This document shows, one piece after another, positions 14,672-63,975 of a stretch of DNA of 64,000 nucleotides. Under the pieces are notes generated by a model. It did not search any database, was not told the DNA's origin, and saw only the letters and a program-made list of their open reading frames with translations. Where the stretch lies: positions 172,185 to 236,184 of the IMG/VR virus record IMGVR_UViG_3300030294_000005. One strand, written 5' to 3'. How positions within the stretch are numbered: position 1 is the stretch's first letter; every line of letters starts with the position of its first letter. The position numbers and the translations under genes are program-made.

Positions 14672-16960
14672 ATGAATGACATAATAAGGAAAGTTTTAGA
14701 TGAAGTAAGACAAGGGAATAAAACTTTTCTTACTGATTTAGAAACTATGAGTAAGATAAACTCATATGTAGAAATGGTAATAAAATCAAATACACATTCC
14801 AATGATGATATAGAAAATATGAAAGGTATGTTAGAGATTTCTAACATACTTTTTAATAACACAGATAGAGATTTTATATTATTAGAGGATGGGGTATATG
14901 ATTTATTAATTGAAAAATGTAAAAAATATGATCCAAATTATTTAGTAGGAGCAAAACCTGTTTATTTTGCTCCTACAAATAATGACTCATTGACTAAACT
15001 AAAATCAAAAGTTATAAGATTTGTTGATCAAGATAAGATAGATGATATGTTATATGGAAATGATATATTCAAATATGAAGAAATAAAAAGAACTGATATA
15101 TTGAAGAGTCCAATAACATTTAAGAATACTGATGTGATAGCTAAGAGAGTAGTAAATACAAAACATAACTATCCAAAATTAGTAGGGACTTTAGATAAGG
15201 GTAAATTTGTATTAAGTTCTCAAGCAAAAGAAAAAGGTGTATATGATGATAATAATGTAAAAATATTAGAAAGGGATTTCTTTAAGAAACATATAGATGA
15301 TGGAATCTTAGATCCAAATAGAAAGTTCTATATAGTTGCAGAATTAAAATATGATGGAATTTCTGTTGAAGGAGATGTTACAAATCAGATAGAAGGAGGA
15401 AGAACTAGAGGAGATACAAATGAAGATATTGCAGCTGACCTAACTCCTATATTAAGAGGTTATAGATTTAGATATGCTCCAATGATAGATGAAGCTTTTG
15501 GGATGAAATTTGAAGCTATAATGACTCATAATAATTTAGCAAAATATAATGTAATCAAACAGAAAGATTATAAGAATTGTAGAACTGCTATCTCTGGATT
15601 ATTTGCATCGTCTGATGCTCCACAGTTTAGAGACTTTATAACATTAGTACCTTTAGCAACTTCTATAGAAGACATTGATAGACTTTCTGAAATAGAATTT
15701 ATGAATAAGTATTACAATTCTGGAGAAAGATTAAGATATTCAGTATTGTATGGTAACTATGTAGATATACTATTTCAGATAAAGAAATTTGTAGAAGAGG
15801 CAGAATATCTTAGACCATATATGCCTTTCATGTATGATGGAGTAGTGATATCTTATATAGAACCAGATCTCATAGATAAACTTGGAAGAGTAAATTCTGT
15901 TAATAAATATTCAATGGCAGTAAAATTTAATCCACTTAAGAAACAAGCAATATTTATAGAATACAGATATACCGTAGGCCAAGATGGTGTAATAACTCCT
16001 ATGATTTATTATACTGCAGTAGAGTTTTATGGCACAACACACAATCATTCTTCTGGTCATTCATATGAAAGATTTAGAACTTTGGCTTTAAGAAAAGGTG
16101 ATATAATAGATGTAGAATATGTGAATGATGTTATGCCATATGTATCAAAACCAGATAATTCACATAATCTAGAAAATACAAATCCAGTTGAAGTATTTCC
16201 TACAAAATGTCCTTCATGCGGAATAGTGCTAGAAATATCTGAATCAGGTAAATCTGCATTATGTTCTAATATGGCATGTAAGCAAAGAAATATAGCTAGA
16301 ATAGTGAGTATGTTAAAGAAATTAAATGTTAAAGATTTCTCAGATGCTTATTTGTTACAGATAGGTAAATATACATTATCGGATATGATGAATCTATCTG
16401 TAGATGAAATACAATTCTTAGGAGAGATTACTTCACAAAAGTTTATAGAAAGAATGAATCAATTAAAATTACAACCTATATATGATTATAAGATTATAGG
16501 AAGTCTTGGATTTACAGATATAGGTGTTAGAAAATGGAAGTTAATATTAAATAAATATACATTAGATGAGATACTATCTTTTACAGAAGAGCAACTAAGA
16601 GATGCTTTATTAAATATAAAAGGTATAGGTCCAGCTACTGTAGATACTATAGTATCAGAATTTAAATTCTTTAAGGCAGATATAGATACTATACTTAAGA
16701 TGCCTAATATACTAAAGTCTAAAGGAGTTAAGTCGGGTAAGTCTATAAGATTTACTGGATTTAGAAATGAAGAATTAGTAAATACTTTAAATGATATGGG
16801 ATATGATGCAAATGGAGATAGTGGTGTTACAAAATCAACAGATATATTATTAGTTCCATTTGAAGGTTACACTAGTCCTAAGACAGTTAAAGCATCAGCT
16901 AATAATATTATGATAATTCCTATAAATGATTTTACTAATAATATGGATAAGTATTTATAA
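14672..16960 (+). CDS. ligA: NAD-dependent DNA ligase
   Basis: ELKYDG adenylation motif, TRGD, DGVV, AVKF, VGQDGVITP, Cys4 Zn finger, HhH KGIGPA, BRCT-like IRFTG. Confidence 0.93.
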   Translation: MNDIIRKVLDEVRQGNKTFLTDLETMSKINSYVEMVIKSNTHSNDDIENMKGMLEISNILFNNTDRDFILLEDGVYDLLIEKCKKYDPNYLVGAKPVYFAPTNNDSLTKLKSKVIRFVDQDKIDDMLYGNDIFKYEEIKRTDILKSPITFKNTDVIAKRVVNTKHNYPKLVGTLDKGKFVLSSQAKEKGVYDDNNVKILERDFFKKHIDDGILDPNRKFYIVAELKYDGISVEGDVTNQIEGGRTRGDTNEDIAADLTPILRGYRFRYAPMIDEAFGMKFEAIMTHNNLAKYNVIKQKDYKNCRTAISGLFASSDAPQFRDFITLVPLATSIEDIDRLSEIEFMNKYYNSGERLRYSVLYGNYVDILFQIKKFVEEAEYLRPYMPFMYDGVVISYIEPDLIDKLGRVNSVNKYSMAVKFNPLKKQAIFIEYRYTVGQDGVITPMIYYTAVEFYGTTHNHSSGHSYERFRTLALRKGDIIDVEYVNDVMPYVSKPDNSHNLENTNPVEVFPTKCPSCGIVLEISESGKSALCSNMACKQRNIARIVSMLKKLNVKDFSDAYLLQIGKYTLSDMMNLSVDEIQFLGEITSQKFIERMNQLKLQPIYDYKIIGSLGFTDIGVRKWKLILNKYTLDEILSFTEEQLRDALLNIKGIGPATVDTIVSEFKFFKADIDTILKMPNILKSKGVKSGKSIRFTGFRNEELVNTLNDMGYDANGDSGVTKSTDILLVPFEGYTSPKTVKASANNIMIIPINDFTNNMDKYL

Positions 16961-26502: not shown

Positions 26503-26721
26503 ATGGAAAGAGATACCCTAATATACGATAAAGGAAAATTAATGTGTGTAGCAAAAATAGATACTACCCCAGTTGGAAATGAAGTAACTAAATTAATTAA
26601 AGTTAATATTAATGATTAACTCTATTATGTTTTATATATGCTTGATATGGATTATGGAATAATAGTTTCTGAAAAGACTGCTATGGAATGTAGGGGAATA
26701 GTAGAGGTGATTAAATTATGA
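26503..26721 (+). pseudogene. small gene with in-frame TAA at 26617-26619
   Basis: GGAGGT RBS; frame continues past the TAA to a TGA overlapping the next ATG (ATGA). Confidence 0.45.
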
Positions 26722-27047
26722 AGAAAATAATATCATTTATAAATAATGGAGGAAAAGAAATTATGACAAAAGGTCATCCAAGGTGGGATGAATTTTGTAA
26801 GAGATTAAAAGGAAGTGAAGGTTGTAATTTTAGATATGATGAAAATGGTAAACTTATATGGAATTGTGGTGGTGGAGAAGATAAATCATTTGCAATAAAA
26901 ATTCTTGAAACCATGCCAGAAATAGATATTCAAAGGAGTATTGAATATTTTGAGACTAGTGGTGGATGGTGTGATTGTGAAATAATTTTAAATGTTATGG
27001 GATTAATAAAGTTTTTATATACTGACCCAAGTAAATTTATTATATAA
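26718..27047 (+). CDS. DUF2695-like protein
   Basis: GGWCDCEIILN motif. Confidence 0.65.
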   Translation: MKKIISFINNGGKEIMTKGHPRWDEFCKRLKGSEGCNFRYDENGKLIWNCGGGEDKSFAIKILETMPEIDIQRSIEYFETSGGWCDCEIILNVMGLIKFLYTDPSKFII

Positions 27048-27090: not shown

Positions 27091-28026
27091 TTAATATTGT
27101 GATACGTCTGGATTATCAATAACAACTAACTTATAAGTTTGATCTAGATTAGTATTTCTAGCAATACCATTCCTTACATCAATAGATGTATCGTTTAAGA
27201 ACATAGGATCTGGTCTATCAGCCCCAGGAATTGATTCTCCTGTTTGTGTATTTATAACATCAAACTTTCTTTCACCAGTAGTAGAATTGTATAATACTAC
27301 AGTTTTTATATTAGGATTTTCCATCATTAACATTTTATTTACAGATGGATTCATAGTATAACCTTGATTATTTTGGTACATATCTGTACCCATTACTCCA
27401 CTATTCAACAACGTAAGTTCATTTTGTGAAGGTGGATTATATGCATTAGGAGTATTATAAGTACCAACTGGTGTAGAGATGTATGCATTGTACATATCCA
27501 TTATTCTCTTATCATCATCTTGATCTGCATCACCCATTTTAAGATCTTTTATTCTCTTAATTTCTAAGTTATGGCAATCAGTTATCGTTTTATTTATTTC
27601 TCTTATTGCTGTAACTTTAGTAGTTATTAGTGATGACATTGTATTAGTAAGTAAAGTCATATAATCATATTTTCTTTTTAGTGTTTTAGATTGTCTTATC
27701 AGATCTAATTCACCTTTCATTTCTGATTGTAGTGTATCAATCTGAACTATAGAATTTTTTAACAATCCTTCTGTTTCATCATAACTATCTCTATATGGTT
27801 CAGCTGTTTGATACATAGGTAAATCTTTACCACTATCTCCTGTTAATAATTCTTGACCATCTACAAGTTTCTTCCTAGGTCTACCCCTTTTCTTTTTTTC
27901 ATCATCTGGTATATAATCTATTGGCAATGAAGATTGTTTACTTGTAAAAAAATCTACGTTAATTATACTTGGAACATTATGATCTAGTCCTGAATCATCA
28001 AAACTTATTATTTTTTGCATATTCAT
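27091..28026 (-). CDS. hypothetical protein with AT-hook and coiled coil
   Basis: KKRGRPRKK AT-hook; N-terminal KIISF; AACA-N6-TA promoter at 28048-28059 (-). Confidence 0.7.
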   Translation of the reverse strand: MNMQKIISFDDSGLDHNVPSIINVDFFTSKQSSLPIDYIPDDEKKKRGRPRKKLVDGQELLTGDSGKDLPMYQTAEPYRDSYDETEGLLKNSIVQIDTLQSEMKGELDLIRQSKTLKRKYDYMTLLTNTMSSLITTKVTAIREINKTITDCHNLEIKRIKDLKMGDADQDDDKRIMDMYNAYISTPVGTYNTPNAYNPPSQNELTLLNSGVMGTDMYQNNQGYTMNPSVNKMLMMENPNIKTVVLYNSTTGERKFDVINTQTGESIPGADRPDPMFLNDTSIDVRNGIARNTNLDQTYKLVVIDNPDVSQY

Positions 28027-28162: not shown

Positions 28163-30091
28163 GTGATTGATATGATTAAAAATTATCCAGCTGGGAGCAA
28201 TTTAACAATATTAAATACAATATATTTATATCCTACAAAAGACGAAAATGATAAATGGTCAAAAGATAAATTACTTATAATATTTAAAGATAATGTTACA
28301 GGAGAAAAACATTATGAAGAAATAGAAACTCCTGATTATGAATTTTATATGGCAAAATCAGATGAGTTTATAGATCATAATTTATTATTTATTGAAAAGG
28401 ATAAAGTTGATAAAATATCCACTCCATATAATTCTTTAGCTAAGAAGGTTGCTGAATTAACAGGTAATACAGAATTTTATTATGATAATATAAGAAATGG
28501 GAATAGATATGCAAATAATAAATTGTATACCCATCCTAAAATATTTATGGCAGATCAAAATATAGAAGATCATTATAGATTTAGATTTTCTAATACTTAT
28601 CAAAATCCTATAATACAAGTATCTAAAGCATTCTTTGATATAGAAGTGGATACTATTAAAATGAGAGGAGATTTTCCAGATATGGGAGAATGCCCAATCA
28701 ATGCTATAAGTGTAATTAGTGAAGTTACAAATAAAGTATATATATTTTTATTAAGAAATAAAGAAAATCCATTAATACAAGAATTCGAAGATTCAATTGA
28801 TGATGAATTATTTAAAGAATTAAAAGAATTTGTTAAAGCTAATGTTGGTGGATGGAAGAATGAAAAAAGAGCAGGCTTAGATGAGTTAGATTATGAATTT
28901 ATGTTTTATGATGAAGAAATAAAATTAATTCAAGATTTATTTATATTATTTAATACAACTAAACCAGATTTTATATTAGTTTGGAATATGGCATTTGATA
29001 TGACATATATTATAGAAAGAATAAAGATGCTAGGATATAACCCAGAAGATATAATATGTCATCCAGATTTTAAAACTAGAACTGCACAATATTATAAAGA
29101 TACTAGAAATGAGAATGATTTTAGTAAAAGAGGAGATAGTGCAATAATTAGTTCTTATTCGGTATATATGGATCAACTAATTAGTTTTGCATCTAGAAGA
29201 AGGGGACAACATGCTTATCCAGATTATAAACTTGATACAATAGGTAATATAATTGCTGATGTTGGTAAATTAGATTATTCTGATATAACAACAAGTATAT
29301 CAAAATTACCATATTTAAATTATAAAGTATTTGTATTCTATAATATTATGGATACAATTGTTCAGAAATGTATAGAGAATAAAACTGCAGATGTAGAATA
29401 TGCATTCAATAAATGTTTAATAAATAATACTAGATATAGTAAATGTCATAGACAAACTATATATCTTGTAAATAGAGGTGTAAAAGAATTTTATAAAGAT
29501 GATTTCATTATGGGATGTAATAATAATAAATATAATGAAAAATCAGAGAAGTTTCCTGGAGCATTTGTTGCAGATCCTAGTAAAGTAGATGCGTATGGTA
29601 AAATAAAAATAGCAGGTAATCCTATTAATGTAATGAATAATCTTGATGATTTTGATTATAAAGCTCTATATCCAAGTCTAATGAGAGAATTTAATATGGC
29701 ACCTAATACTCAGATTGGTATTATCAATATACCAAATCAAATATATAATAATGAGAATAGATTTAATAGAGAAATATATAGTAGAGGTTCTGCTTTTATA
29801 GAAGATTTACAGTCTCAAGTTTATCTAGAATTCTGTACAAGATGGTTACATTTTGCAGATTATGGATCATTATATAAAGATGTTATAGAATACTTTACAA
29901 CTGAAGCTAACCCAGGAAGAGCATTGAAATGGTATAATGATAAAAATCAGCAAGTAGTATTAAGATTTATTAACAATAATGCTAAACAAAAAGTTATATC
30001 ATTTAATACAAATGATAAACAAAGAATAATAGATTTTAATTATATTCATGATTTTACTACTGTTAATGATCATTTTCAAAGGAGATGCTAA
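28163..30091 (+). CDS. Split family-B DNA polymerase, part 1 (3'-5' exonuclease + palm motif A)
   Basis: ExoI FDIEVD, ExoII WNMAFD, YKLDTIG, ExoIII YNIMD, FPGAFV, motif A DFDYKALYPSLM; motifs B and C are absent. Confidence 0.9.
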   Translation: MIDMIKNYPAGSNLTILNTIYLYPTKDENDKWSKDKLLIIFKDNVTGEKHYEEIETPDYEFYMAKSDEFIDHNLLFIEKDKVDKISTPYNSLAKKVAELTGNTEFYYDNIRNGNRYANNKLYTHPKIFMADQNIEDHYRFRFSNTYQNPIIQVSKAFFDIEVDTIKMRGDFPDMGECPINAISVISEVTNKVYIFLLRNKENPLIQEFEDSIDDELFKELKEFVKANVGGWKNEKRAGLDELDYEFMFYDEEIKLIQDLFILFNTTKPDFILVWNMAFDMTYIIERIKMLGYNPEDIICHPDFKTRTAQYYKDTRNENDFSKRGDSAIISSYSVYMDQLISFASRRRGQHAYPDYKLDTIGNIIADVGKLDYSDITTSISKLPYLNYKVFVFYNIMDTIVQKCIENKTADVEYAFNKCLINNTRYSKCHRQTIYLVNRGVKEFYKDDFIMGCNNNKYNEKSEKFPGAFVADPSKVDAYGKIKIAGNPINVMNNLDDFDYKALYPSLMREFNMAPNTQIGIINIPNQIYNNENRFNREIYSRGSAFIEDLQSQVYLEFCTRWLHFADYGSLYKDVIEYFTTEANPGRALKWYNDKNQQVVLRFINNNAKQKVISFNTNDKQRIIDFNYIHDFTTVNDHFQRRC

Positions 30092-30094
30092 ATA

Positions 30095-30646
30095 ATGACT
30101 AATGATGAAGTATTAGAATTGGTTGATATATGCAAGTTAATGAAAAGTGATTATGTAGTAATGCATGATAATATTGTAATGGGAAGTGATAGTAGTTTTG
30201 CATACTTTAAAAAATTAGAATTAGATCATCAACTTCCTAATATTGCAGTAAATATGCTAGATTTAAAAAATGAATTAATATTACTAACAGATACTCCTTC
30301 TGATGTACATTTATTTGATATAAATATATATAATAAATTATTAGATATGCATGATACTGTATTGAATATGAAATATATAAAAAATATATCATATGATAGT
30401 TTAGAAAAAGATACTGATTTTGAAGAAGCTTTGAGTTTAAAAACAGCACAGGGAATAAGATATATTGTAAAAGATAAGAAATATTTTATACCTATATATA
30501 ATGGATTACTTCCTGTTGTTAAAGCAGATAAGATTGATTTAGTTATATATGATTTAAATACTTATAGCTTTCTATGTAAGTTTATAATTCATAAAAAGAA
30601 AAAAATGAGTATAGAACTGTATTTATTATGTATGCATATGTGTTGA
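30095..30646 (+). CDS. hypothetical protein co-transcribed with DNA polymerase (candidate clamp/processivity-like)
   Basis: Directly downstream of pol part 1; IVMGSDSSFAYFKKLEL weakly recalls PCNA QAMDSSHV; function speculative. Confidence 0.6.
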   Translation: MTNDEVLELVDICKLMKSDYVVMHDNIVMGSDSSFAYFKKLELDHQLPNIAVNMLDLKNELILLTDTPSDVHLFDINIYNKLLDMHDTVLNMKYIKNISYDSLEKDTDFEEALSLKTAQGIRYIVKDKKYFIPIYNGLLPVVKADKIDLVIYDLNTYSFLCKFIIHKKKKMSIELYLLCMHMC

Positions 30647-30700
30647 GAGATATATACAGTATGGCTTAGCCATACTGTATATGTTTGTTTTTATAACTAG

Positions 30701-56558: not shown

Positions 56559-56954
56559 TTATTCTTTTTTATCAAACGATATTACTTTAAGCTTCATTTC
56601 CTCAATACCTTTTTCTATCATAGTATCAAAATTAATAAATTTTACATCTTTATTTGATATTAGAAATGCACTAGCATCTAAAGAGTTTAATTTTTCACTA
56701 CCTATTTCTTTTACTACTAAGATTTCATCATCTAATAAAAGTTTTTGAATACTAGTTATAACTTTAAGATCATCATCATCAGATTGTAAATCTATTATTC
56801 CATCACAAGAAAACATAGCTTTTGAACTATCATCAATATCTCTTCCAAATATAATAATATTACTAGACGGTATAGATTCTACAAGTTCTATATATGCATC
56901 TATATCTTTAACACCTACAGAATTTGATAAAGTTTTTCCATAATAATCAGCCAT
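56559..56954 (-). CDS. hypothetical protein
   Basis: AAGGAG RBS; C-terminal KVISF. Confidence 0.65.
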   Translation of the reverse strand: MADYYGKTLSNSVGVKDIDAYIELVESIPSSNIIIFGRDIDDSSKAMFSCDGIIDLQSDDDDLKVITSIQKLLLDDEILVVKEIGSEKLNSLDASAFLISNKDVKFINFDTMIEKGIEEMKLKVISFDKKE

Positions 56955-58274: not shown

Positions 58275-59567
58275 TAAATATGAGGTGCGTTATACAGTAA
58301 TGTATAATTGAAAACTCTGTGAACTGCTGGGAGTCCCTAAGAGCTTAATATACTACAACGTGATCTGTAAAGATGAGCGTGAATGTGGTCGAAAGACAGA
58401 AAGAAATATTAAGATAAGGTATGGTGAGAATCCTAACTCTTATAAACAATGGGTAATCATAGCAGCCAAGCTGCCAATTATAATAAAAGATGATATATCA
58501 CTAACTTTATATTTATTAAGAGGTGATATTAATGAAAATTATTAGTTTTTTAAATAAAGAAGACGAAATGCCTATATATTGGTATAAATTAAACTGTGAT
58601 AATATTAAGGATAATTTATATGAAATATCAGAAACATCTGAAATTAGATCTGCTAAAACAAAGAAAATATTAAAACAAAGAAATCATAAATCTAGAAGTA
58701 GTAGTTATAAAGACATAGCATTAAGTACAAATATTATTAAAGGTAAAAGTTTTTTAGTTCATAGATTAGTAGCTAAAACTTTCATTCCTAATCCATACAA
58801 TAAACCTGAAGTAAATCATAAAAATTATGATACAAAGAAAAACTATTGTGATAATTTAGAATGGATGACACATAAAGAAAATGTAGAATATTCTAAAAAT
58901 AATATAAAAAGAGGAGAAGATAATATAAATTCATCTTTAACAAATGATCAGGTTTATAAAATATGTAATATGCTACAAGAAAATAAATCTTATAGTGAAA
59001 TATTATTTAATATAGGAATGGAAGATAGTGATAATAATAGAGATACTGTAGGTAATATTAAACGAGGTATAACTTATAAAAATATATCTAAACAATTTAA
59101 CTTATCTAATGCTAATGCAAAATCTTCTAAATATGATATAAATACAATTAGAGATATATGTAGATATATATTTAATGGATATGACTATATAAAAATAGCA
59201 GAATTAATAAATGAGGATATTTCAGATATAAATAAAAAGAAATCATTTTATGAATTTATTCGTCTTATTAAAAATAGAAAAAATTATAAAGATATATCAT
59301 CTGAATATAATTGGTAGAAGGTTCAACGACTATCGAAAGCTATAAATCCATAAGAACTATTAATTTAGCAGGGTTGAAAATAAGGTATAGTAATGTATAC
59401 ACGAAGTGAGTAGAGTACACTAGAAGTCTAGTGGAAGTGCAGAGCGTCCTAGTAAAATAGGATGAAGATATAGTCTCTTCTTCGTATGAAAGTACGAGCA
59501 TTCTAAATAAATGATATATAGTGAGAGTATAATATTCATTATACAACGACTATATAGTAAGATTAAG
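58275..59567 (+). mobile_element. Group I self-splicing intron in DNA polymerase motif B
   Basis: 5' exon ends in U and pairs aacgcu/ggugcguu (P1); core elements gaactgctggga, gttcaacgacta (59321) and gaagatatagtct (59464); terminal G at 59567; splicing restores KLDANA|LYGSIG in frame. Confidence 0.9.
58532..59317 (+). CDS. Intron-encoded HNH homing endonuclease (NUMOD4/HNH type)
   Basis: YEISETSEIRS, VHRLVAKTFIPNP, VNHKN..KKN...NLEWMT..EN; GAGGTG RBS. Confidence 0.9.
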   Translation: MKIISFLNKEDEMPIYWYKLNCDNIKDNLYEISETSEIRSAKTKKILKQRNHKSRSSSYKDIALSTNIIKGKSFLVHRLVAKTFIPNPYNKPEVNHKNYDTKKNYCDNLEWMTHKENVEYSKNNIKRGEDNINSSLTNDQVYKICNMLQENKSYSEILFNIGMEDSDNNRDTVGNIKRGITYKNISKQFNLSNANAKSSKYDINTIRDICRYIFNGYDYIKIAELINEDISDINKKKSFYEFIRLIKNRKNYKDISSEYNW

Positions 59568-61241
59568 TTATATGGATCAATTGGTCAAGTATCTTGCTTA
59601 TATTATAATGTTAATATTGCATCATCTGTTACAGTTCAAGGTAGATCATGTATATCAACAGCAATGCTTCAATTTGAAATGTTTCTAGCAAATAATTCTA
59701 ATTTTGGATCTCTTAATGAAGTAATTACATTTATAGATAATATAGTTACTGAAAAAAGAGAATATTCTGATAGATTAATATTAGATAATGATATAACTAT
59801 GACTGAAAGTTTTAATAAGGTAATGATGACTTGTGGATTTGATTATATACCATCAGAGGAAGATCTATTAATAGTATGGGAAATATTTGGTAGATTAAAA
59901 CAAGAAGACTGGAATAGATTATATTATAAGAATAATCTATATGATTTTGTAAATAATAGATCTATGACAAATGCATTAATTTATATATTAACAGAATTAC
60001 ATGAACCATTCTTAGATCCAAATGATGTACCATCAGAAATAAAAGTAGAGTTAGATGAATTTTTATCATTTCTAAAAGAATACGTTTATTATTCATATCA
60101 GATAATAGATAGATTAGATAAAGCAGAAAATATGATAAGAAAAGTAGTAGCTCTAGGAGATACTGATTCAAATATAGTTTCATTAGATGCATGGTATAGA
60201 TTTACATTAGATAAAGTAGTGGACATACCAATGGCTATTAAAAAGAAAAAATTAAAAGCAATTTCTTTTTTAGAAACTGATGAATTCGGAGATTCTGATA
60301 AATTAAAAGTAATAGATTTTGTTGAAGATGATAGAGATTATGATTTTAAGAATGATGAGATTATAAGTATTCATAAAAGTATGAATGTATTAAGTATTAT
60401 CCCTCAAGAAGGAGTAAGATATTCTATAATAAATATTATGGCATATTGTCTATATAAATTAATTAATGACTACATGTGTAAATATACACAGAATTCTAAT
60501 TCATATGATCCAAAGAAAAAATGTTTACTTATTATGAAAAACGAATATTTATTTAAACGTGTATTATTAACCCTTGCTAAGAAGAATTATGCAACAATTC
60601 AAGAATTACAAGAAGGTAAATTCTTAAATGGATTATTAGATATAAAAGGATTGCCTATAGCTAAAACTACATTAAATATTAAGACTCAAGAAAAGCTACA
60701 AGAGATTTTATTTGAAGATGTATTAAATTCAGATGAGATAGATCAATTAAGAGTTTTAAAAGATTTAGCTAAAGTAGAGAAAGAAATATTTGATTCTTTA
60801 TTAAGTAAGAATAAAGAATATTATAAACCATTAACTATAAAGTCTATGAATAGTTATGATGATCCATTTAGATTAAGTGGAATAAAAGCAAGTTATGTTT
60901 GGAATGTATTAAGATATGATAATATAGCAGCTATTGATTTAGAAGTTAGAAATAATATAGATGTTATAAAAGTTGATATAACTCAAAAGAATGTAGAAAA
61001 GATAAAAGAATTATATCCAGATGTTTATGATAAAATAATACCATTACTTAAAGAAAAACCTTTTATAAAAGGAATAACAGCAATGGCAGTCCCAAAGAAT
61101 AGCGAGTTACCAGATTGGACATTAGAGTTTATAGATTATCCAACAATAATAAATGATAATCTTAAGAACTTTCCATTAGAGTCTATTGGATTATGTAAAA
61201 TGAATGATACAAATAATTATAGTAATATATTAAAACTATAA
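59568..61241 (+). CDS. Split family-B DNA polymerase part 2, exon 2
   Basis: LYGSIG, VTVQGR, motif C GDTDS, MKNEY, KKNYA, IKGL. Confidence 0.9.
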   Translation, partial: LYGSIGQVSCLYYNVNIASSVTVQGRSCISTAMLQFEMFLANNSNFGSLNEVITFIDNIVTEKREYSDRLILDNDITMTESFNKVMMTCGFDYIPSEEDLLIVWEIFGRLKQEDWNRLYYKNNLYDFVNNRSMTNALIYILTELHEPFLDPNDVPSEIKVELDEFLSFLKEYVYYSYQIIDRLDKAENMIRKVVALGDTDSNIVSLDAWYRFTLDKVVDIPMAIKKKKLKAISFLETDEFGDSDKLKVIDFVEDDRDYDFKNDEIISIHKSMNVLSIIPQEGVRYSIINIMAYCLYKLINDYMCKYTQNSNSYDPKKKCLLIMKNEYLFKRVLLTLAKKNYATIQELQEGKFLNGLLDIKGLPIAKTTLNIKTQEKLQEILFEDVLNSDEIDQLRVLKDLAKVEKEIFDSLLSKNKEYYKPLTIKSMNSYDDPFRLSGIKASYVWNVLRYDNIAAIDLEVRNNIDVIKVDITQKNVEKIKELYPDVYDKIIPLLKEKPFIKGITAMAVPKNSELPDWTLEFIDYPTIINDNLKNFPLESIGLCKMNDTNNYSNILKL

Positions 61242-61908: not shown

Positions 61909-63975
61909 ATGTTAGAAAATCTTAATAACTATGGTCCTTATGCAGAATTGGTAAAGAATAAAAAGATGAAAGTTTATACAAAGGATTTTAATAAAGATAA
62001 TATAGATAATCACTTCTTTTGGATATTAAATATATTTAGAGATGGGATTGAAACTGATGAAGTTCAAAAAGCTTTTGTAAATGTTGAATTTAATAATGCT
62101 GTAAATATAGATTTAACTTTACAAGATTTACTCTTTAATGTACTTATGTGGGATATAATAGTTAAATCAGATATGATAATAGAACCAAAGCATTTATTCT
62201 TTGGAAAATCTATAACACAAAATAGTATTAAGAAATATGTTGATGTATATTTCTTAGAAGAGAAAAGAAAATCTACATCTAATATAAAACTAAATAACAT
62301 GATAGATGATATGATGTTTAAATGGTGTTATATAGATGAGTTTAACGGCTATCTATCAAATACAATAAATTTAGAAGACTTCATTAAACTAATGAAAGAG
62401 AATAGTGAATTCAATAGATTAATACATGCAGATTTAACTGGTACTCCAGTTGAAGAAGTAAAAGCAGTAGGAATGGAATATGCTAATAAGATGATAGATA
62501 TAATACAAAAATCAGATCATTGTTTAGCAGATTTCTTTAATGCTGGCGAAGGTGTAAATCCAAAACAATTTAAAGAAGTAGCAATCAATATAGGAACTAA
62601 ACCAGATGGTAGAGGTGGGGTATATCCTACATTGATAAATACGAACTTTTTAACTGGTGGAGTAAATGATACATTATCATTCTTTATAGAAGAGTCTGGT
62701 GGTAGAGTTGCACAGATTATAGTAGAAGGTAATGTAGGTATTTCAGGATACTTTGCAAGATTGTTAGGACTTAATAATATAGATACTATAATGTATCCAG
62801 ATCATAATTATGTGTGCGATACTAAGAATTTTGAAGAAATATTTATAACTAATGCAATAGTGCAGTCTAAATTTGAAAATAGATATTATAGACTTAGTCC
62901 TAATGGACAAGAATATCTATTGAAAAATACTACCAAAGATCTAGTTGGAAAGAAAATATATCTACGTTCCCCAATGACTTGTGCTTCACATGCTTCAGGT
63001 CATGGGATATGTTATAGATGTTATGGAGATTTAGCATATACAAATAATGATATCAATATAGGAAAAATAGCAGCAGAAGAAGTATCTTCTACACTTACTG
63101 GAAGAATGCTTCAAGCTAAACATCTATTAGAATCTGCAGTAAAAGTATTTAAGTGGCCAGCTGAATTTAATAGATTCTTTGATTTAGATTATGATATTAT
63201 AAAAGTAACTTCAGACGATTCTGTAAACTTAAATAATTATAAATTATTAATAGATAATATTAGTTTGCAAAGTGAATATGAAGATGTAGAATATAATGAA
63301 TACGTTACTAAATTTGAAGTATTATCACCTACTGGTGAAATATTTAATATCCATACTCAAGATGCTGATGAACTTTATATAACATCTGAGTTGAATACAA
63401 TAATAAGAGATAAAGCTACTGAGATAGATGGAAAGGTAGCAGTAGATTTTAAAGATTTATATGAAGCTCCATTGTTTATATTAGAGATTCAGAATTATGA
63501 TCTATCAGCTACATTAAAAGCAATAAAAGATATTATTGATAAAACCGATATAACAAACAACTTAAACAGAAATGATATCCTACAACGATTAGTAGAGACG
63601 TTTATAGAGGGTGGAATCAATGTAATGTCCATTCATGGTGAAGTAATATTAAGTAATCAATTAAGAAATGTAGATAATATATTAGAAAAGCCAGAATGGA
63701 AATATCCAAATGAACCATACAATCTATTGACATTAAAACAATCACTATCAAATAATCCATCTATTATAGTATCATTATCATATGAAGGATTATCGAAAAT
63801 GTTATATAATCCTTTGACTTATAGAAAGAACAAACCTTCCTTTATGGATTTATTCTTCATGAAACGCCCCTCAGCCTATCTATCTGGTAAGGATGCGGTT
63901 AAAAAATATAAAGATGATGGATATATAGAAAAAGATAATAAGAAAGTTATAAGATTTGTAGAAGATCCTAAATAA
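61909..63975 (+). CDS. Non-virion RNA polymerase beta' subunit, C-terminal half
   Basis: Bridge helix GGR...SGYFARLL, Zn site RSPMTC...GICYRCYG, trigger loop IGKIAAEEVSSTLTGRMLQAKH, HGEVILSNQLR. Confidence 0.9.
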   Translation: MLENLNNYGPYAELVKNKKMKVYTKDFNKDNIDNHFFWILNIFRDGIETDEVQKAFVNVEFNNAVNIDLTLQDLLFNVLMWDIIVKSDMIIEPKHLFFGKSITQNSIKKYVDVYFLEEKRKSTSNIKLNNMIDDMMFKWCYIDEFNGYLSNTINLEDFIKLMKENSEFNRLIHADLTGTPVEEVKAVGMEYANKMIDIIQKSDHCLADFFNAGEGVNPKQFKEVAINIGTKPDGRGGVYPTLINTNFLTGGVNDTLSFFIEESGGRVAQIIVEGNVGISGYFARLLGLNNIDTIMYPDHNYVCDTKNFEEIFITNAIVQSKFENRYYRLSPNGQEYLLKNTTKDLVGKKIYLRSPMTCASHASGHGICYRCYGDLAYTNNDINIGKIAAEEVSSTLTGRMLQAKHLLESAVKVFKWPAEFNRFFDLDYDIIKVTSDDSVNLNNYKLLIDNISLQSEYEDVEYNEYVTKFEVLSPTGEIFNIHTQDADELYITSELNTIIRDKATEIDGKVAVDFKDLYEAPLFILEIQNYDLSATLKAIKDIIDKTDITNNLNRNDILQRLVETFIEGGINVMSIHGEVILSNQLRNVDNILEKPEWKYPNEPYNLLTLKQSLSNNPSIIVSLSYEGLSKMLYNPLTYRKNKPSFMDLFFMKRPSAYLSGKDAVKKYKDDGYIEKDNKKVIRFVEDPK

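What the first reader, a model, noticed from the sequence alone, without database searches (positions are those of the whole stretch)
30095..30646. Candidate divergent sliding clamp/hub protein right behind DNA polymerase part 1
A 183-aa protein encoded 3 nt after the polymerase gene whose tail carries three I/L-x-F motifs. The pattern helix-strand-IVMGSDSSFAYFKKLEL recalls the PCNA QAMDSSHVSLV and beta-clamp VATDGHRL segments, and the C-terminal half is rich in predicted beta-strands. The similarity is weak and judged by eye, but this is the natural candidate receptor for the shared motif.
Basis: inference. Interest (0 to 1): 0.6.

Follow-up and report, generated by a model that had tools for sequence, protein, structure and literature searches.

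The report
Minimal clamp-fold partner of split polymerase
The 183-residue gene just after the first half of this jumbo phage's split DNA polymerase folds like a stripped-down DNA sliding clamp, in a phage group thought to lack one, and is the best candidate docking site for a short peptide tag that the phage's replication enzymes share.

Summary
The ORF at 30095-30646 (+) is a real gene. It has an RBS, starts 3 nt after and in frame with the DNA polymerase N-terminal part (DNAP-N), and ends at an 18-bp terminator hairpin. Pfam, PHROGs, PDB profile and word searches found nothing. An exhaustive search found 229 unnamed relatives. All 42 related jumbo-phage loci have one; in 41 it follows DNAP-N directly. 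With that alignment AlphaFold2 gives pLDDT 93.8. Four structure libraries return DNA clamps almost exclusively: T4 gp45 Z 10.1, then 9-1-1, DnaN, PCNA and herpes UL44/UL42, then a drop to Z 3.9. So the clamp fold is confirmed, in a reduced form (10 strands, 4 helices). No canonical clamp or clamp loader was detected. The closest functional precedent is phiKZ/Goslar Rhc, a monomeric clamp-derived subunit of the same split polymerase type (October 2026 preprints). KVISF-type peptides occur 17 times against 1.3 expected, at termini of both polymerase halves, ligase, HNH nucleases, an RNAP subunit and an AT-hook protein. In four relatives (a fifth seen in passing) orthologues carry a different, lineage-specific motif at the same positions. 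That argues for a fast-evolving phage receptor. Binding to this protein is unproven (co-folding gave no verdict), and ring versus monomer is open.

The parts
30095..30646 (+). Gene for the 183-aa clamp-fold protein (P0001)
   Evidence: ORF and translation. AF2 model pLDDT 93.8, pTM 0.89. Clamp-only structural hits. Family of 229 clusters.
30080..30084 (+). Shine-Dalgarno-like AGGAG about 10 nt upstream of the ATG, inside the end of the DNAP-N gene
   Evidence: Read directly from the sequence.
30648..30696 (+). Terminator-like hairpin (18-bp stem, 3-nt loop) plus T-run, closing the DNAP-N/clamp two-gene unit
   Evidence: 3 terminator-like sites in the region against 0.5 expected. None lies between DNAP-N and the clamp gene.
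28163..30091 (+). DNAP-N: N-terminal part of the split B-family DNA polymerase (exonuclease plus palm motif A)
   Evidence: phrog_3011 E 4e-55. 31.6% identity to AR9 g132. Motif A DxxxLYPS at residue 498.
29954..30055 (+). DNAP-N tail with tandem short motifs VLRF, KVISF, RIIDF, IHDF (residues 598-631)
   Evidence: Relatives carry three tandem copies of their own lineage-specific motif at the same place, spaced about 9-15 residues apart.
59511..61241 (+). DNAP-C: C-terminal part of the split polymerase (motif C GDTDS at residue 215), with an internal KVIDF at residues 266-270 (nt 60306-60320)
   Evidence: PF20286 divDNApol E 1.5e-25 and phrog_2927 E 1e-53. Motif positions. Orthologues carry their own lineage's motif in the equivalent region, 290-334 residues from the C-terminus.
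27091..28026 (-). 311-aa AT-hook-containing protein transcribed divergently from DNAP-N, with KIISF at residues 5-9 (nt 28000-28014)
   Evidence: Orthologues in G002, G003 and G005 carry their own lineage's motif at the N-terminus, and the L005 orthologue starts MRVISF.
14672..16960 (+). NAD-dependent DNA ligase with KVIRF at residues 113-117 (nt 15008-15022)
   Evidence: PF01653 and phrog_3869. The G003 orthologue has AFSY at the same residue 113.
61909..63975 (+). RNA polymerase beta-like subunit with KVIRF five residues from its C-terminus (nt 63943-63957)
   Evidence: phrog_3015 E 3e-46. The G002 orthologue has RPFV 12 residues from its C-terminus.
58523..59317 (+). HNH endonuclease with KIISF at residues 5-9
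   Evidence: PF13392 and phrog_59. The G002 orthologue has KPFI at residue 15.
56559..56954 (-). 131-aa protein of unknown function with KVISF four residues from its C-terminus
   Evidence: No family match.
26718..27047 (+). 109-aa DUF2695 protein with KIISF at residues 3-7

Best explanation
P0001 is a minimal two-domain member of the DNA-clamp fold. It serves as an accessory, processivity-type subunit of this phage's split B-family DNA polymerase. It is co-transcribed and probably translationally coupled with DNAP-N. I infer that it sits on the polymerase near the palm insertion and thumb, and offers its helix-lined concave face to the duplex leaving the active site. This is how the clamp domain of phiKZ/Goslar Rhc and herpesvirus UL42 work, without a clamp loader and most likely without forming a closed ring. 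I further infer that it is the docking site for the lineage-specific terminal peptide (KVISF type here). That peptide is carried three to four times in the DNAP-N tail. It occurs once each on DNAP-C, DNA ligase, HNH nucleases, an RNAP beta-like subunit and an AT-hook protein here, and on an SF2 helicase in three relatives. This would make the protein the replisome's recruitment hub. Shown: gene reality, family, synteny, clamp fold, absence of detectable canonical clamp or loader, and the reality and co-variation of the motif. Inferred: polymerase binding, DNA binding, oligomeric state, and identity as the motif receptor.
For: Fold: AF2 with a 139-sequence alignment gives pLDDT 93.8 and pTM 0.89. 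In VIA-align against 48,161 PDB representatives, ranks 1-38 are all clamps or viral processivity factors: gp45 Z 10.1 (rmsd 3.6 over 164 residues), Rad1 9.3, DnaN 9.0, PCNA 8.9, UL44 6.6, UL42 6.2. The next hit is Z 3.9. The Foldseek PDB top 50 are all clamps. ESM Atlas gives TM 0.66-0.67 to gp45-family clusters. BFVD returns family members at TM 0.74-0.80, then phage clamps and chimallivirus 'ribonuclease H' proteins of 440-557 aa.

Linkage to the polymerase: the gene follows DNAP-N directly in 41 of 42 related loci, with abutting or overlapping stop and start in most lineages. It is single-copy in six related genomes. The unit is closed by a terminator. One natural in-frame DNAP-N-clamp fusion of 817 aa exists.

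No alternative clamp or loader: PF00712, PF00705, PF02916, PF09116 and PF13177 are absent. PF00004 gives only a weak P-loop hit in a 1205-aa ORF.

Precedent: phiKZ Rhc's clamp domain binds DNAP-C thumb, palm and palm insertion plus dsDNA as a monomer and boosts the split polymerase (PMC13648687; PMC13648698). DNAP-C here belongs to the same PF20286 type.

Hub: KVISF occurs 8 times against 0.11 expected, and the wider KVISF-type pattern 17 times against 1.3. Conservation is at the peptide level, because Ser, Val and Ile codons vary. A specificity matrix is diagonal across five genomes. Ten orthologous groups carry the motif at equivalent positions, several at the identical residue, with lineage-specific sequence. 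The clients are replication, repair and transcription enzymes. By analogy to phiKZ, the motifs on DNAP-N and DNAP-C would lie in or next to the parts (C-terminal end of DNAP-N, insertion in DNAP-C) that contact Rhc's clamp domain there.
Against: No sequence-level link to any clamp family or to the Rhc clamp domain was found. The PDB profile search gave 0 hits, and hhalign/hmmsearch were not significant. Homology therefore rests on structure alone. The protein is mildly acidic (pI 5.5; family median 6.6), unlike the strongly basic DNA face described for Rhc. No model coordinates were available, so I could not check a basic surface, a peptide groove or the oligomerisation strands. Polymerase binding is untested, because the one co-folding job was not informative. 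The best structural match (gp45) is a ring-forming trimer, and three tandem motif copies in every polymerase tail could hint at a trimer. The motif receptor could be another phage protein.
Confidence: 0.55

Rival explanations
1. P0001 is a true ring-forming sliding clamp, a gp45/PCNA-like homotrimer of two-domain protomers that encircles DNA. It would be loaded either by an unrecognised loader or by the polymerase itself, perhaps using the three tandem motif copies in the DNAP-N tail. The KVISF-type peptide would be its clamp-binding motif.
For: The best structural match is trimeric T4 gp45 over its whole length (Z 10.1; TM 0.66-0.67). The near-neutral to acidic pI resembles ring clamps. The client list of polymerase, ligase, helicase, nucleases and an RNAP subunit, with motifs at extreme termini, mirrors gp45, PCNA and beta-clamp client networks. 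The copy number of three in the DNAP-N tail is conserved across lineages.
Against: No AAA+ clamp loader is detectable. Only 10 strands are present against the 16-18 expected of a canonical two-domain clamp (my recollection of PCNA topology). Residues 64-75 form a loop where I would expect the last strands of domain 1, which in PCNA include an interface strand. The related split-polymerase phages use a monomeric clamp domain. A spacing of about 9-15 residues between motif copies is too short to span neighbouring pockets of a PCNA-sized ring (my geometric estimate).
Confidence: 0.25
2. P0001 is a polymerase accessory subunit only. The shared terminal motif is read by a different receptor, such as another phage hub protein, the host beta-clamp, or a factor that targets proteins to a replication compartment or virion.
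For: No direct evidence ties the motif to P0001 (one search gave no verdict). All clients are DNA-acting proteins that would also share any DNA-compartment targeting signal. Three instances (QKVISF twice, QKIISF once) resemble the bacterial QxxLxF clamp-binding hexapeptide (my recollection).
Against: The motif changes completely between related phages: KVISF, LFHKI, [KR]PF[IVT], AFSYI, KVWHY. That argues against a conserved host receptor such as DnaN. PBS1-type msRNAP phages lack chimallin, so a phage-nucleus import signal is unlikely (10.1101/2023.02.24.529968); I did not test this genome itself. The densest motif cluster lies directly upstream of the clamp gene, and in one contig it is fused to it.
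Confidence: 0.3
3. P0001 is a clamp-fold protein whose main role is in transcription or repair rather than polymerase processivity. Examples are late-gene activation (as T4 gp45 does with gp33/gp55, or Goslar Rhc does for late genes) or a 9-1-1-like repair scaffold.
For: An RNAP beta-like subunit carries the motif at its C-terminus. Goslar Rhc's clamp domain is needed for late transcription independently of replication. 9-1-1 subunits score nearly as high as gp45.
Against: The near-universal operon with DNAP-N, and the triple motif on the polymerase tail, point first to the DNA polymerase.
Confidence: 0.1

Closest known systems
Rhc (RNase H-clamp; phiKZ gp155, Goslar gp190) of Chimalliviridae (bioRxiv October 2026; PMC13648687, PMC13648698)
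   Same: It is a clamp-derived, Pfam-invisible domain serving the same type of split B-family polymerase (DNAP-N plus DNAP-C, PF20286) in msRNAP-encoding jumbo phages with no annotated sliding clamp or loader. Chimallivirus 'ribonuclease H' proteins appear among the structural hits.
   Different: Rhc's clamp domain is about 280 aa, is fused to an N-terminal RNase HI, and is encoded away from the polymerase genes. P0001 is a stand-alone 183-aa protein in an operon with DNAP-N. RNase HI here is a separate 226-aa gene. No sequence similarity was detectable. No co-evolving terminal motif network came up in the parts of the Rhc papers I read.
Bacteriophage T4/RB69 gp45 sliding clamp
   Same: It is the best structural match (Z 10.1, 164 residues, rmsd 3.6 A; TM 0.66-0.67). 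It is a two-domain protomer. Its clients (polymerase, ligase, RNase H, transcription factors gp33/gp55) dock through short terminal peptides (established knowledge; the top hit 6drt is gp45 with a ligase peptide).
   Different: gp45 is 228 aa, forms a trimeric ring and needs the gp44/62 loader. P0001 is 45 residues shorter with fewer strands. No loader is detectable, there is no Pfam gp45 signature, and its oligomeric state is unknown.
Herpesvirus processivity factors UL42 (monomer) and UL44 (C-shaped dimer)
   Same: They are clamp-fold proteins that bind their polymerase directly and hold DNA without a loader or closed ring. They are among the hits (Z 6.2-6.6).
   Different: They are larger (about 270-320 aa folded core), basic on the DNA-binding face, eukaryotic-virus proteins, and the structural match is weaker than to gp45, PCNA or DnaN.
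PCNA PIP-box and bacterial beta-clamp binding-motif networks
   Same: A short hydrophobic peptide at the extreme N- or C-termini of polymerase, ligase, helicase and nucleases. Three instances read Qxx[I]xF.
   Different: Here the motif is rewritten wholesale between related phages while keeping its positions. In each lineage examined, three or four tandem copies sit on the polymerase tail. The receptor is not demonstrated.

Membership tests
DNA clamp fold superfamily (PCNA / DnaN / gp45 / 9-1-1 / herpes processivity factors) | Two topologically similar alpha/beta domains per protomer, with four helices on the concave face and outer beta sheets | tested here: met
   The model has 4 helices and 10 strands at pLDDT 93.8. 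164-171 of 183 residues superpose on whole two-domain clamps at Z 8-10. Ranks 1-38 are exclusively clamps, then Z drops to 3.9. TM is 0.66-0.67. The fold is reduced: fewer strands than canonical.
DNA clamp fold superfamily | Detectable sequence signature (Pfam PCNA_N, DNA_pol3_beta, DNA_PPF, gp45-slide_C, or a profile hit to solved clamps) | tested here: not met
   Pfam gave 0 families. The PDB profile search gave 0 hits at E <= 10. Genome scans with the four Pfam families were negative.
Ring-forming sliding clamps (gp45, PCNA, beta) | Head-to-tail oligomerisation into a closed ring around DNA | not testable with these tools
The secondary-structure count suggests missing strands, but the interface could not be inspected.
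Ring-forming sliding clamps | A cognate AAA+ clamp loader encoded by the same genome (as in T4-like phages) or use of the host loader | tested here: not met
   PF13177 gave no match. PF00004 gave only a 16.5-bit P-loop hit inside a 1205-aa ORF. The genome is estimated 95% complete. Divergent loaders cannot be excluded.
Ring-forming sliding clamps | A hydrophobic pocket that binds a terminal peptide of the polymerase | tested here: inconclusive
   Co-folding P0001 with DNAP-N residues 575-642 gave no verdict. This is evidence neither way.
Rhc-type clamp-derived polymerase subunit (Chimalliviridae) | Partnered with a split PF20286-type B-family polymerase in an msRNAP jumbo phage | tested here: met
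   DNAP-N matches phrog_3011. DNAP-C matches PF20286 and phrog_2927. An RNAP beta-like subunit matches phrog_3015.
Rhc-type clamp-derived polymerase subunit | N-terminal RNase HI domain fused to the clamp domain | tested here: not met
   P0001 begins directly with the first clamp helix. RNase HI is a separate 226-aa gene at G000:C1:117004-117684.
Rhc-type clamp-derived polymerase subunit | Sequence or closest-structure relationship to the Rhc clamp domain | tested here: inconclusive
   hhalign and hmmsearch against phiKZ gp155 were not significant. Chimallivirus RNase H proteins are hit in BFVD at E 1e-3 to 9e-3, no better than canonical clamps.
Rhc-type clamp-derived polymerase subunit | Binds DNAP-C thumb and palm insertion, binds dsDNA, and stimulates synthesis | not tested
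   This needs a multi-chain prediction with DNA, or biochemistry. Only indirect support exists: operon, fusion and motif positions.

The most novel reading that the evidence does not exclude
These AR9-related jumbo phages run a self-contained, loader-free clamp system. A minimal clamp-fold protein is recruited through a terminal beta-strand-like peptide. P0001 lacks the N-terminal strand that canonical clamps have before their first helix, so the peptide may fill that position. Every client (both polymerase halves, ligase, helicase, nucleases, RNAP subunit, AT-hook protein) carries the peptide. The peptide-receptor pair is rewritten in each phage lineage, giving mutually orthogonal replisome 'address codes'. 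The conserved triple copy on the polymerase tail would then assemble or retain several clamp protomers on DNA.
Probability: 0.2. Interest if true: 0.9.

Novelty: new variant of a known kind. Interest (0 to 1): 0.72.

Why it matters
Comparative genomics described phages with this type of split, divergent B-family polymerase as lacking a classical sliding clamp (PMC7824862). PBS1, AR9 and the Staphylococcus jumbo phages are the cultured relatives carrying that polymerase. In October 2026 a clamp-derived subunit fused to RNase H was shown for the nucleus-forming chimalliviruses. This finding supplies the likely counterpart for the non-chimallin branch. It is a large, unannotated family (at least 229 clusters) of unusually small clamp-fold proteins sitting in an operon with DNAP-N.

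It comes with a genome-wide, lineage-specific peptide motif on the replication, repair and transcription enzymes. That motif makes the interaction network directly testable: peptide binding, motif swaps between lineages, and specificity of orthogonal pairs. If the receptor is this protein, the system is a natural example of rapid co-evolution of a clamp-binding motif with its clamp. It would also be a source of orthogonal protein-recruitment pairs.

Tried and rejected
- Pfam and PHROGs scans of P0001 gave nothing usable. The best PHROG hit had E 0.007 over 26 residues.
- tblastn against 50,697 phage records gave only chance hits. The word-index protein search found only the protein itself.
- Single-sequence AF2 (pLDDT 33) and the ESM Atlas model (pLDDT 0.35, spurious HAD-like neighbours) were useless and discarded.
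- The profile search of PDB sequences gave 0 hits.
- BLASTP, hhalign and hmmsearch --max against the positional analogues AR9 g131 and g129, Staphylococcus phage S6_0800 (and its 5-member family A3) and phiKZ Rhc were not significant. A profile scan of the AR9 and S6 genomes with A2 was empty. So I cannot say that AR9 g129, BpSp gp205 or MarsHill gp139 belong to this family. Unnamed BFVD hits of 255 and 259 aa have similar lengths to BpSp gp205 (255 aa) and MarsHill gp139 (260 aa), but the mapping is unverified.
- Complex prediction with P0001 plus DNAP-N residues 575-642 returned 'no answer'.
- I considered whether KVISF is a DNA element such as a promoter overlapping gene ends. I rejected this because Ser codons include TCA, TCT, TCG, AGT and AGC, Val and Ile codons vary, and the exact commonest DNA version occurs once.
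- I considered whether the motif is a phage-nucleus import signal. This is unlikely because PBS1-type phages lack chimallin. I did not test this genome itself.
- A search for RNAP-subunit orthologues by the search for related loci found only 6 close relatives and did not help. Whole relatives' genomes were fetched instead.
- The idea that the DNAP-N tail donates strands missing from the truncated clamp is not supported by any test. Clamp length and tail length show no clean trade-off across lineages.

Full report
**Context**

The window is the last 64 kb of a 236,184-bp IMG/VR jumbo-phage record, about 26% G+C and estimated 95% complete. Its DNA polymerase N-terminal part (DNAP-N, 28163-30091) is 31.6% identical to Bacillus phage AR9 g132. 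Gene order matches AR9, BpSp and the Staphylococcus jumbo phages: SbcC-like ATPase, small genes, DNAP-N, one to three small genes, portal, virion protein, tail sheath. The polymerase is split. Motif A lies in DNAP-N. Motif C (GDTDS) lies in a 576-aa protein at 59511-61241 that matches PF20286 'divergent family B DNA polymerase'.

- The 183-aa ORF (30095-30646) starts one codon after the DNAP-N stop, in the same frame, behind an AGGAG.
- An 18-bp-stem hairpin with a T-run follows at 30648-30696. No terminator separates it from DNAP-N, so the two genes look like one transcription unit.
- The DNAP-N tail carries VLRF, KVISF, RIIDF and IHDF between residues 599 and 631.

**Is it a gene, and does it have relatives?**

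Pfam, PHROGs, tblastn against phage records and the word-index search were blank. Using DNAP-N as bait I fetched 42 related viral loci. A jackhmmer run over their ORFs found a homologue in 41 of them, directly downstream of DNAP-N, usually abutting or overlapping its stop (29 distinct sequences, 173-292 aa). The 42nd phage has the gene elsewhere in its complete genome. Six related genomes each have one copy.

The exhaustive HMMER search found 229 representative clusters at E <= 1e-3, mostly 170-235 aa and all unnamed. One of these, an actinobacterial repeat protein, is a false positive. One 817-aa hit is an in-frame DNAP-N-homologue fusion on a single 4.4-kb metagenome contig. Because the two genes share a frame here, one stop-codon change would create such a fusion. 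This is weak evidence for a physical partnership.

**Fold**

Without an alignment the model was useless (pLDDT 33). With 139 relatives (A2) AlphaFold2 gave pLDDT 93.8 and pTM 0.89. The element order is:

- helix 3-16
- strands 20-24, 27-31, 38-42, 50-53
- helix 54-63
- a loop
- helix 76-90
- strand 97-100
- helix 107-113
- strands 122-126, 130-134, 146-153, 158-166, 172-180

Four independent libraries agree on a DNA clamp:

| Library | Result |
|---|---|
| Foldseek, PDB | Top 50 all clamps (T4 gp45, 9-1-1, PCNA, DnaN); E 2e-4 to 9e-3, probability about 1, but low Foldseek TM |
| VIA-align, 48,161 PDB representatives | Ranks 1-38 all clamps or viral processivity factors: gp45 Z 10.1 (164 residues, rmsd 3.6), Rad1 9.3, DnaN 9.0, PCNA 8.9, UL44 6.6, UL42 6.2; next hit Z 3.9 |
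| BFVD | Unnamed family members at TM 0.74-0.80, then phage sliding clamps and chimallivirus 'ribonuclease H' proteins of 440-557 aa |
| ESM Atlas | TM 0.66-0.67, rmsd 3.7-3.9 over 167-168 residues, to clusters carrying Pfam gp45-slide_C and DNA_PPF |

The alignments span whole two-domain clamps. So P0001 is a compact two-domain version with four helices but only about ten strands, against 16-18 in canonical protomers (my recollection of PCNA topology).

At the sequence level nothing links the family to known clamps.

**Ring or not?**

- The genome has no detectable canonical clamp (PF00712, PF00705, PF02916, PF09116) and no RFC- or delta-prime-type loader. PF13177 gave none, and PF00004 gave only a weak P-loop hit in a 1205-aa ORF.
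- Two preprints of October 2026 show that phiKZ and Goslar, which have the same split polymerase type, use Rhc. This protein is an RNase HI fused to a clamp-derived domain. The clamp domain acts as a monomer, binds the DNAP-C thumb, palm and palm insertion, binds the emerging duplex, and strongly stimulates synthesis. The authors liken it to herpes UL42 (PMC13648687; PMC13648698).
- Here RNase HI is a separate 226-aa gene, and the clamp-fold protein stands alone next to DNAP-N.

Taken together, I favour the non-ring accessory-subunit mechanism. The reasons are the missing loader, the reduced strand complement, the operon, the fusion and this precedent. The ring alternative is not excluded. gp45 is the best match, the pI is 5.5, and I could not inspect coordinates or run an oligomer prediction.

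**The shared motif**

KVISF occurs 8 times in the proteome against 0.11 expected. It ranks among the most enriched pentamers; the more frequent ones overlap one another in register, as paralogous repeats would. The wider pattern [KR][VI]I[SRD]F occurs 17 times against 1.3 expected, 11 of them near termini. Codons differ between instances (Ser TCA, TCT, TCG, AGT, AGC), so selection acts on the peptide and not the DNA.

Carriers in this genome are:

- the DNAP-N tail
- DNAP-C (internal, residue 266)
- NAD-dependent DNA ligase (residue 113)
- two HNH endonucleases
- an RNAP beta-like subunit (C-terminus)
- an AT-hook protein (N-terminus)
- several unknowns

Relatives' DNAP-N tails each carry three tandem copies of a different motif, spaced about 9-15 residues apart: LFHK[FI], [KR]PF[IV], R.MC, FM.R, GM.Y, AF[SI], KV..[YK].

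I fetched four relatives' genomes. Each lineage's motif is enriched only in its own genome, and off-diagonal counts are at background:

| Genome | Lineage motif | Observed | Expected |
|---|---|---|---|
| G001 | LFHK[IF] | 7 | 0.1 |
| G002 | [KR]PF[IVT] | 13 | 0.9 |
| G003 | AFS[YIV] | 10 | 1.3 |
| G005 | KV[WLMF][HRSN][YKR] | 7 | 1.5 |

These patterns were defined from the three tail copies, which are included in the counts.

Ten orthologous groups carry the motif at equivalent positions with lineage-specific sequence. Examples:

- Ligase residue 113 reads KVIRF here and AFSY in G003.
- DNAP-C carries KVIDF at residue 266 here and RPFV at residue 260 in G002.
- The AT-hook protein N-terminus reads KIISF, KPFT, AFSY or KVFNR depending on lineage.
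- An SF2 helicase C-terminus carries LFHKI in G001 and KPFT/RPFT in G002.

A sixth lineage repeats the pattern: NVITFH at the helicase C-terminus and DVITFH in the polymerase tail.

Such wholesale rewriting with conserved positions implies a phage-encoded, co-evolving receptor. It argues against the conserved host beta-clamp. PBS1-type phages lack chimallin, which makes a nucleus-import signal unlikely. The client list is the classic clamp client list, and the only clamp-fold protein found is P0001. By analogy to phiKZ, the motifs on the two polymerase halves would lie in or next to the segments that contact Rhc's clamp domain there.

This makes P0001 the leading candidate receptor. It is an inference, because the one co-folding job gave no verdict.

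**Verdict**

The clamp-fold interpretation is strongly supported at the structural level. The 'sliding ring' and 'motif receptor' parts remain inferences, with the receptor role now well motivated.

Relative to known systems this is a new variant. It is a stand-alone, minimal, sequence-orphan clamp-fold partner of the split polymerase in the non-chimallin msRNAP jumbo-phage branch, accompanied by a lineage-specific motif network. I found no description of that network in the literature searches.

Noticed in passing
window 29954-30055 (DNAP-N tail). Also 15008-15022, 28000-28014 (-), 58535-58549, 60306-60320 and 63943-63957. Relatives G001, G002, G003, G005 (loci L067-L103) and L016.: A genome-wide, lineage-specific short peptide motif sits at the termini of replication, repair and transcription proteins. 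It is KVISF-type here, and LFHKI, [KR]PF[IVT], AFSYI, KVWHY or VITFH in relatives. It keeps its position in ten orthologous groups while its sequence is rewritten. Enrichment is 5- to 70-fold over shuffles, only in the cognate genome.
   Followed up: yes
DNAP-N C-termini in L004-L045 (for example L009 residues 608, 621, 633; L024 residues 605, 620, 632): In each lineage checked, the polymerase tail carries three tandem copies of that lineage's motif, spaced about 9-15 residues apart; four similar strands occur in this window. AR9 (554 aa) and S6 (573 aa) DNAP-N lack this tail. The meaning of the conserved copy number is unexplained.
   Followed up: partly
L060:242-2695 (JGI 3300006217, 4.4-kb contig): An 817-aa ORF fuses DNAP-N in frame to a P0001 homologue. 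It was seen once. In the window the two genes share a frame and are separated by a stop codon plus one codon.
   Followed up: partly
G000:C1:117004-117684 (outside the window; L056): This is a stand-alone RNase HI of 226 aa with a roughly 78-residue C-terminal extension that contains NPIRF, a possible degenerate copy of the motif. Weak similarity to phiKZ Rhc (E 0.007) runs up to the VNP[IL] at the start of Rhc's linker. This is consistent with a fusion or fission relationship between RNase H and the clamp in the two phage branches.
   Followed up: partly
window 27091-28026 (-): A conserved 311-aa protein is encoded divergently from DNAP-N. It has the motif at its N-terminus, an AT-hook-like KKRGRPRKK at about residues 45-53, and a conserved C-terminus ending in Y. 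No family match was found. It may be a DNA-bound replisome component.
   Followed up: partly
L104 = G006:C1:210658-214293 (gene at 212158-212793, - strand): In one complete relative (243,964 bp, direct terminal repeats) the clamp-fold gene is not next to DNAP-N but about 150 kb away. So the operon link is near-universal, not absolute.
   Followed up: partly
L001:8627-9340 (AR9 g129), L002:7671-8450 (S6_0800), L058:4671-5453 (MarsHill gp139), L059:6041-6808 (BpSp gp205): Cultured relatives have an unannotated 238-260-aa gene between DNAP-N and the portal gene. Unnamed BFVD hits of 255 and 259 aa to my model have similar lengths to BpSp gp205 (255 aa) and MarsHill gp139 (260 aa). No sequence similarity to P0001's family was detectable, and I could not fold them.
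   Followed up: partly
whole proteome of G000: Other strongly over-represented pentamers (FLLND, VFLLN, LLNDG, GQCGT, KWGFI, QLTLY) suggest one or more paralogous repeat-protein families elsewhere in the genome.
   Followed up: no
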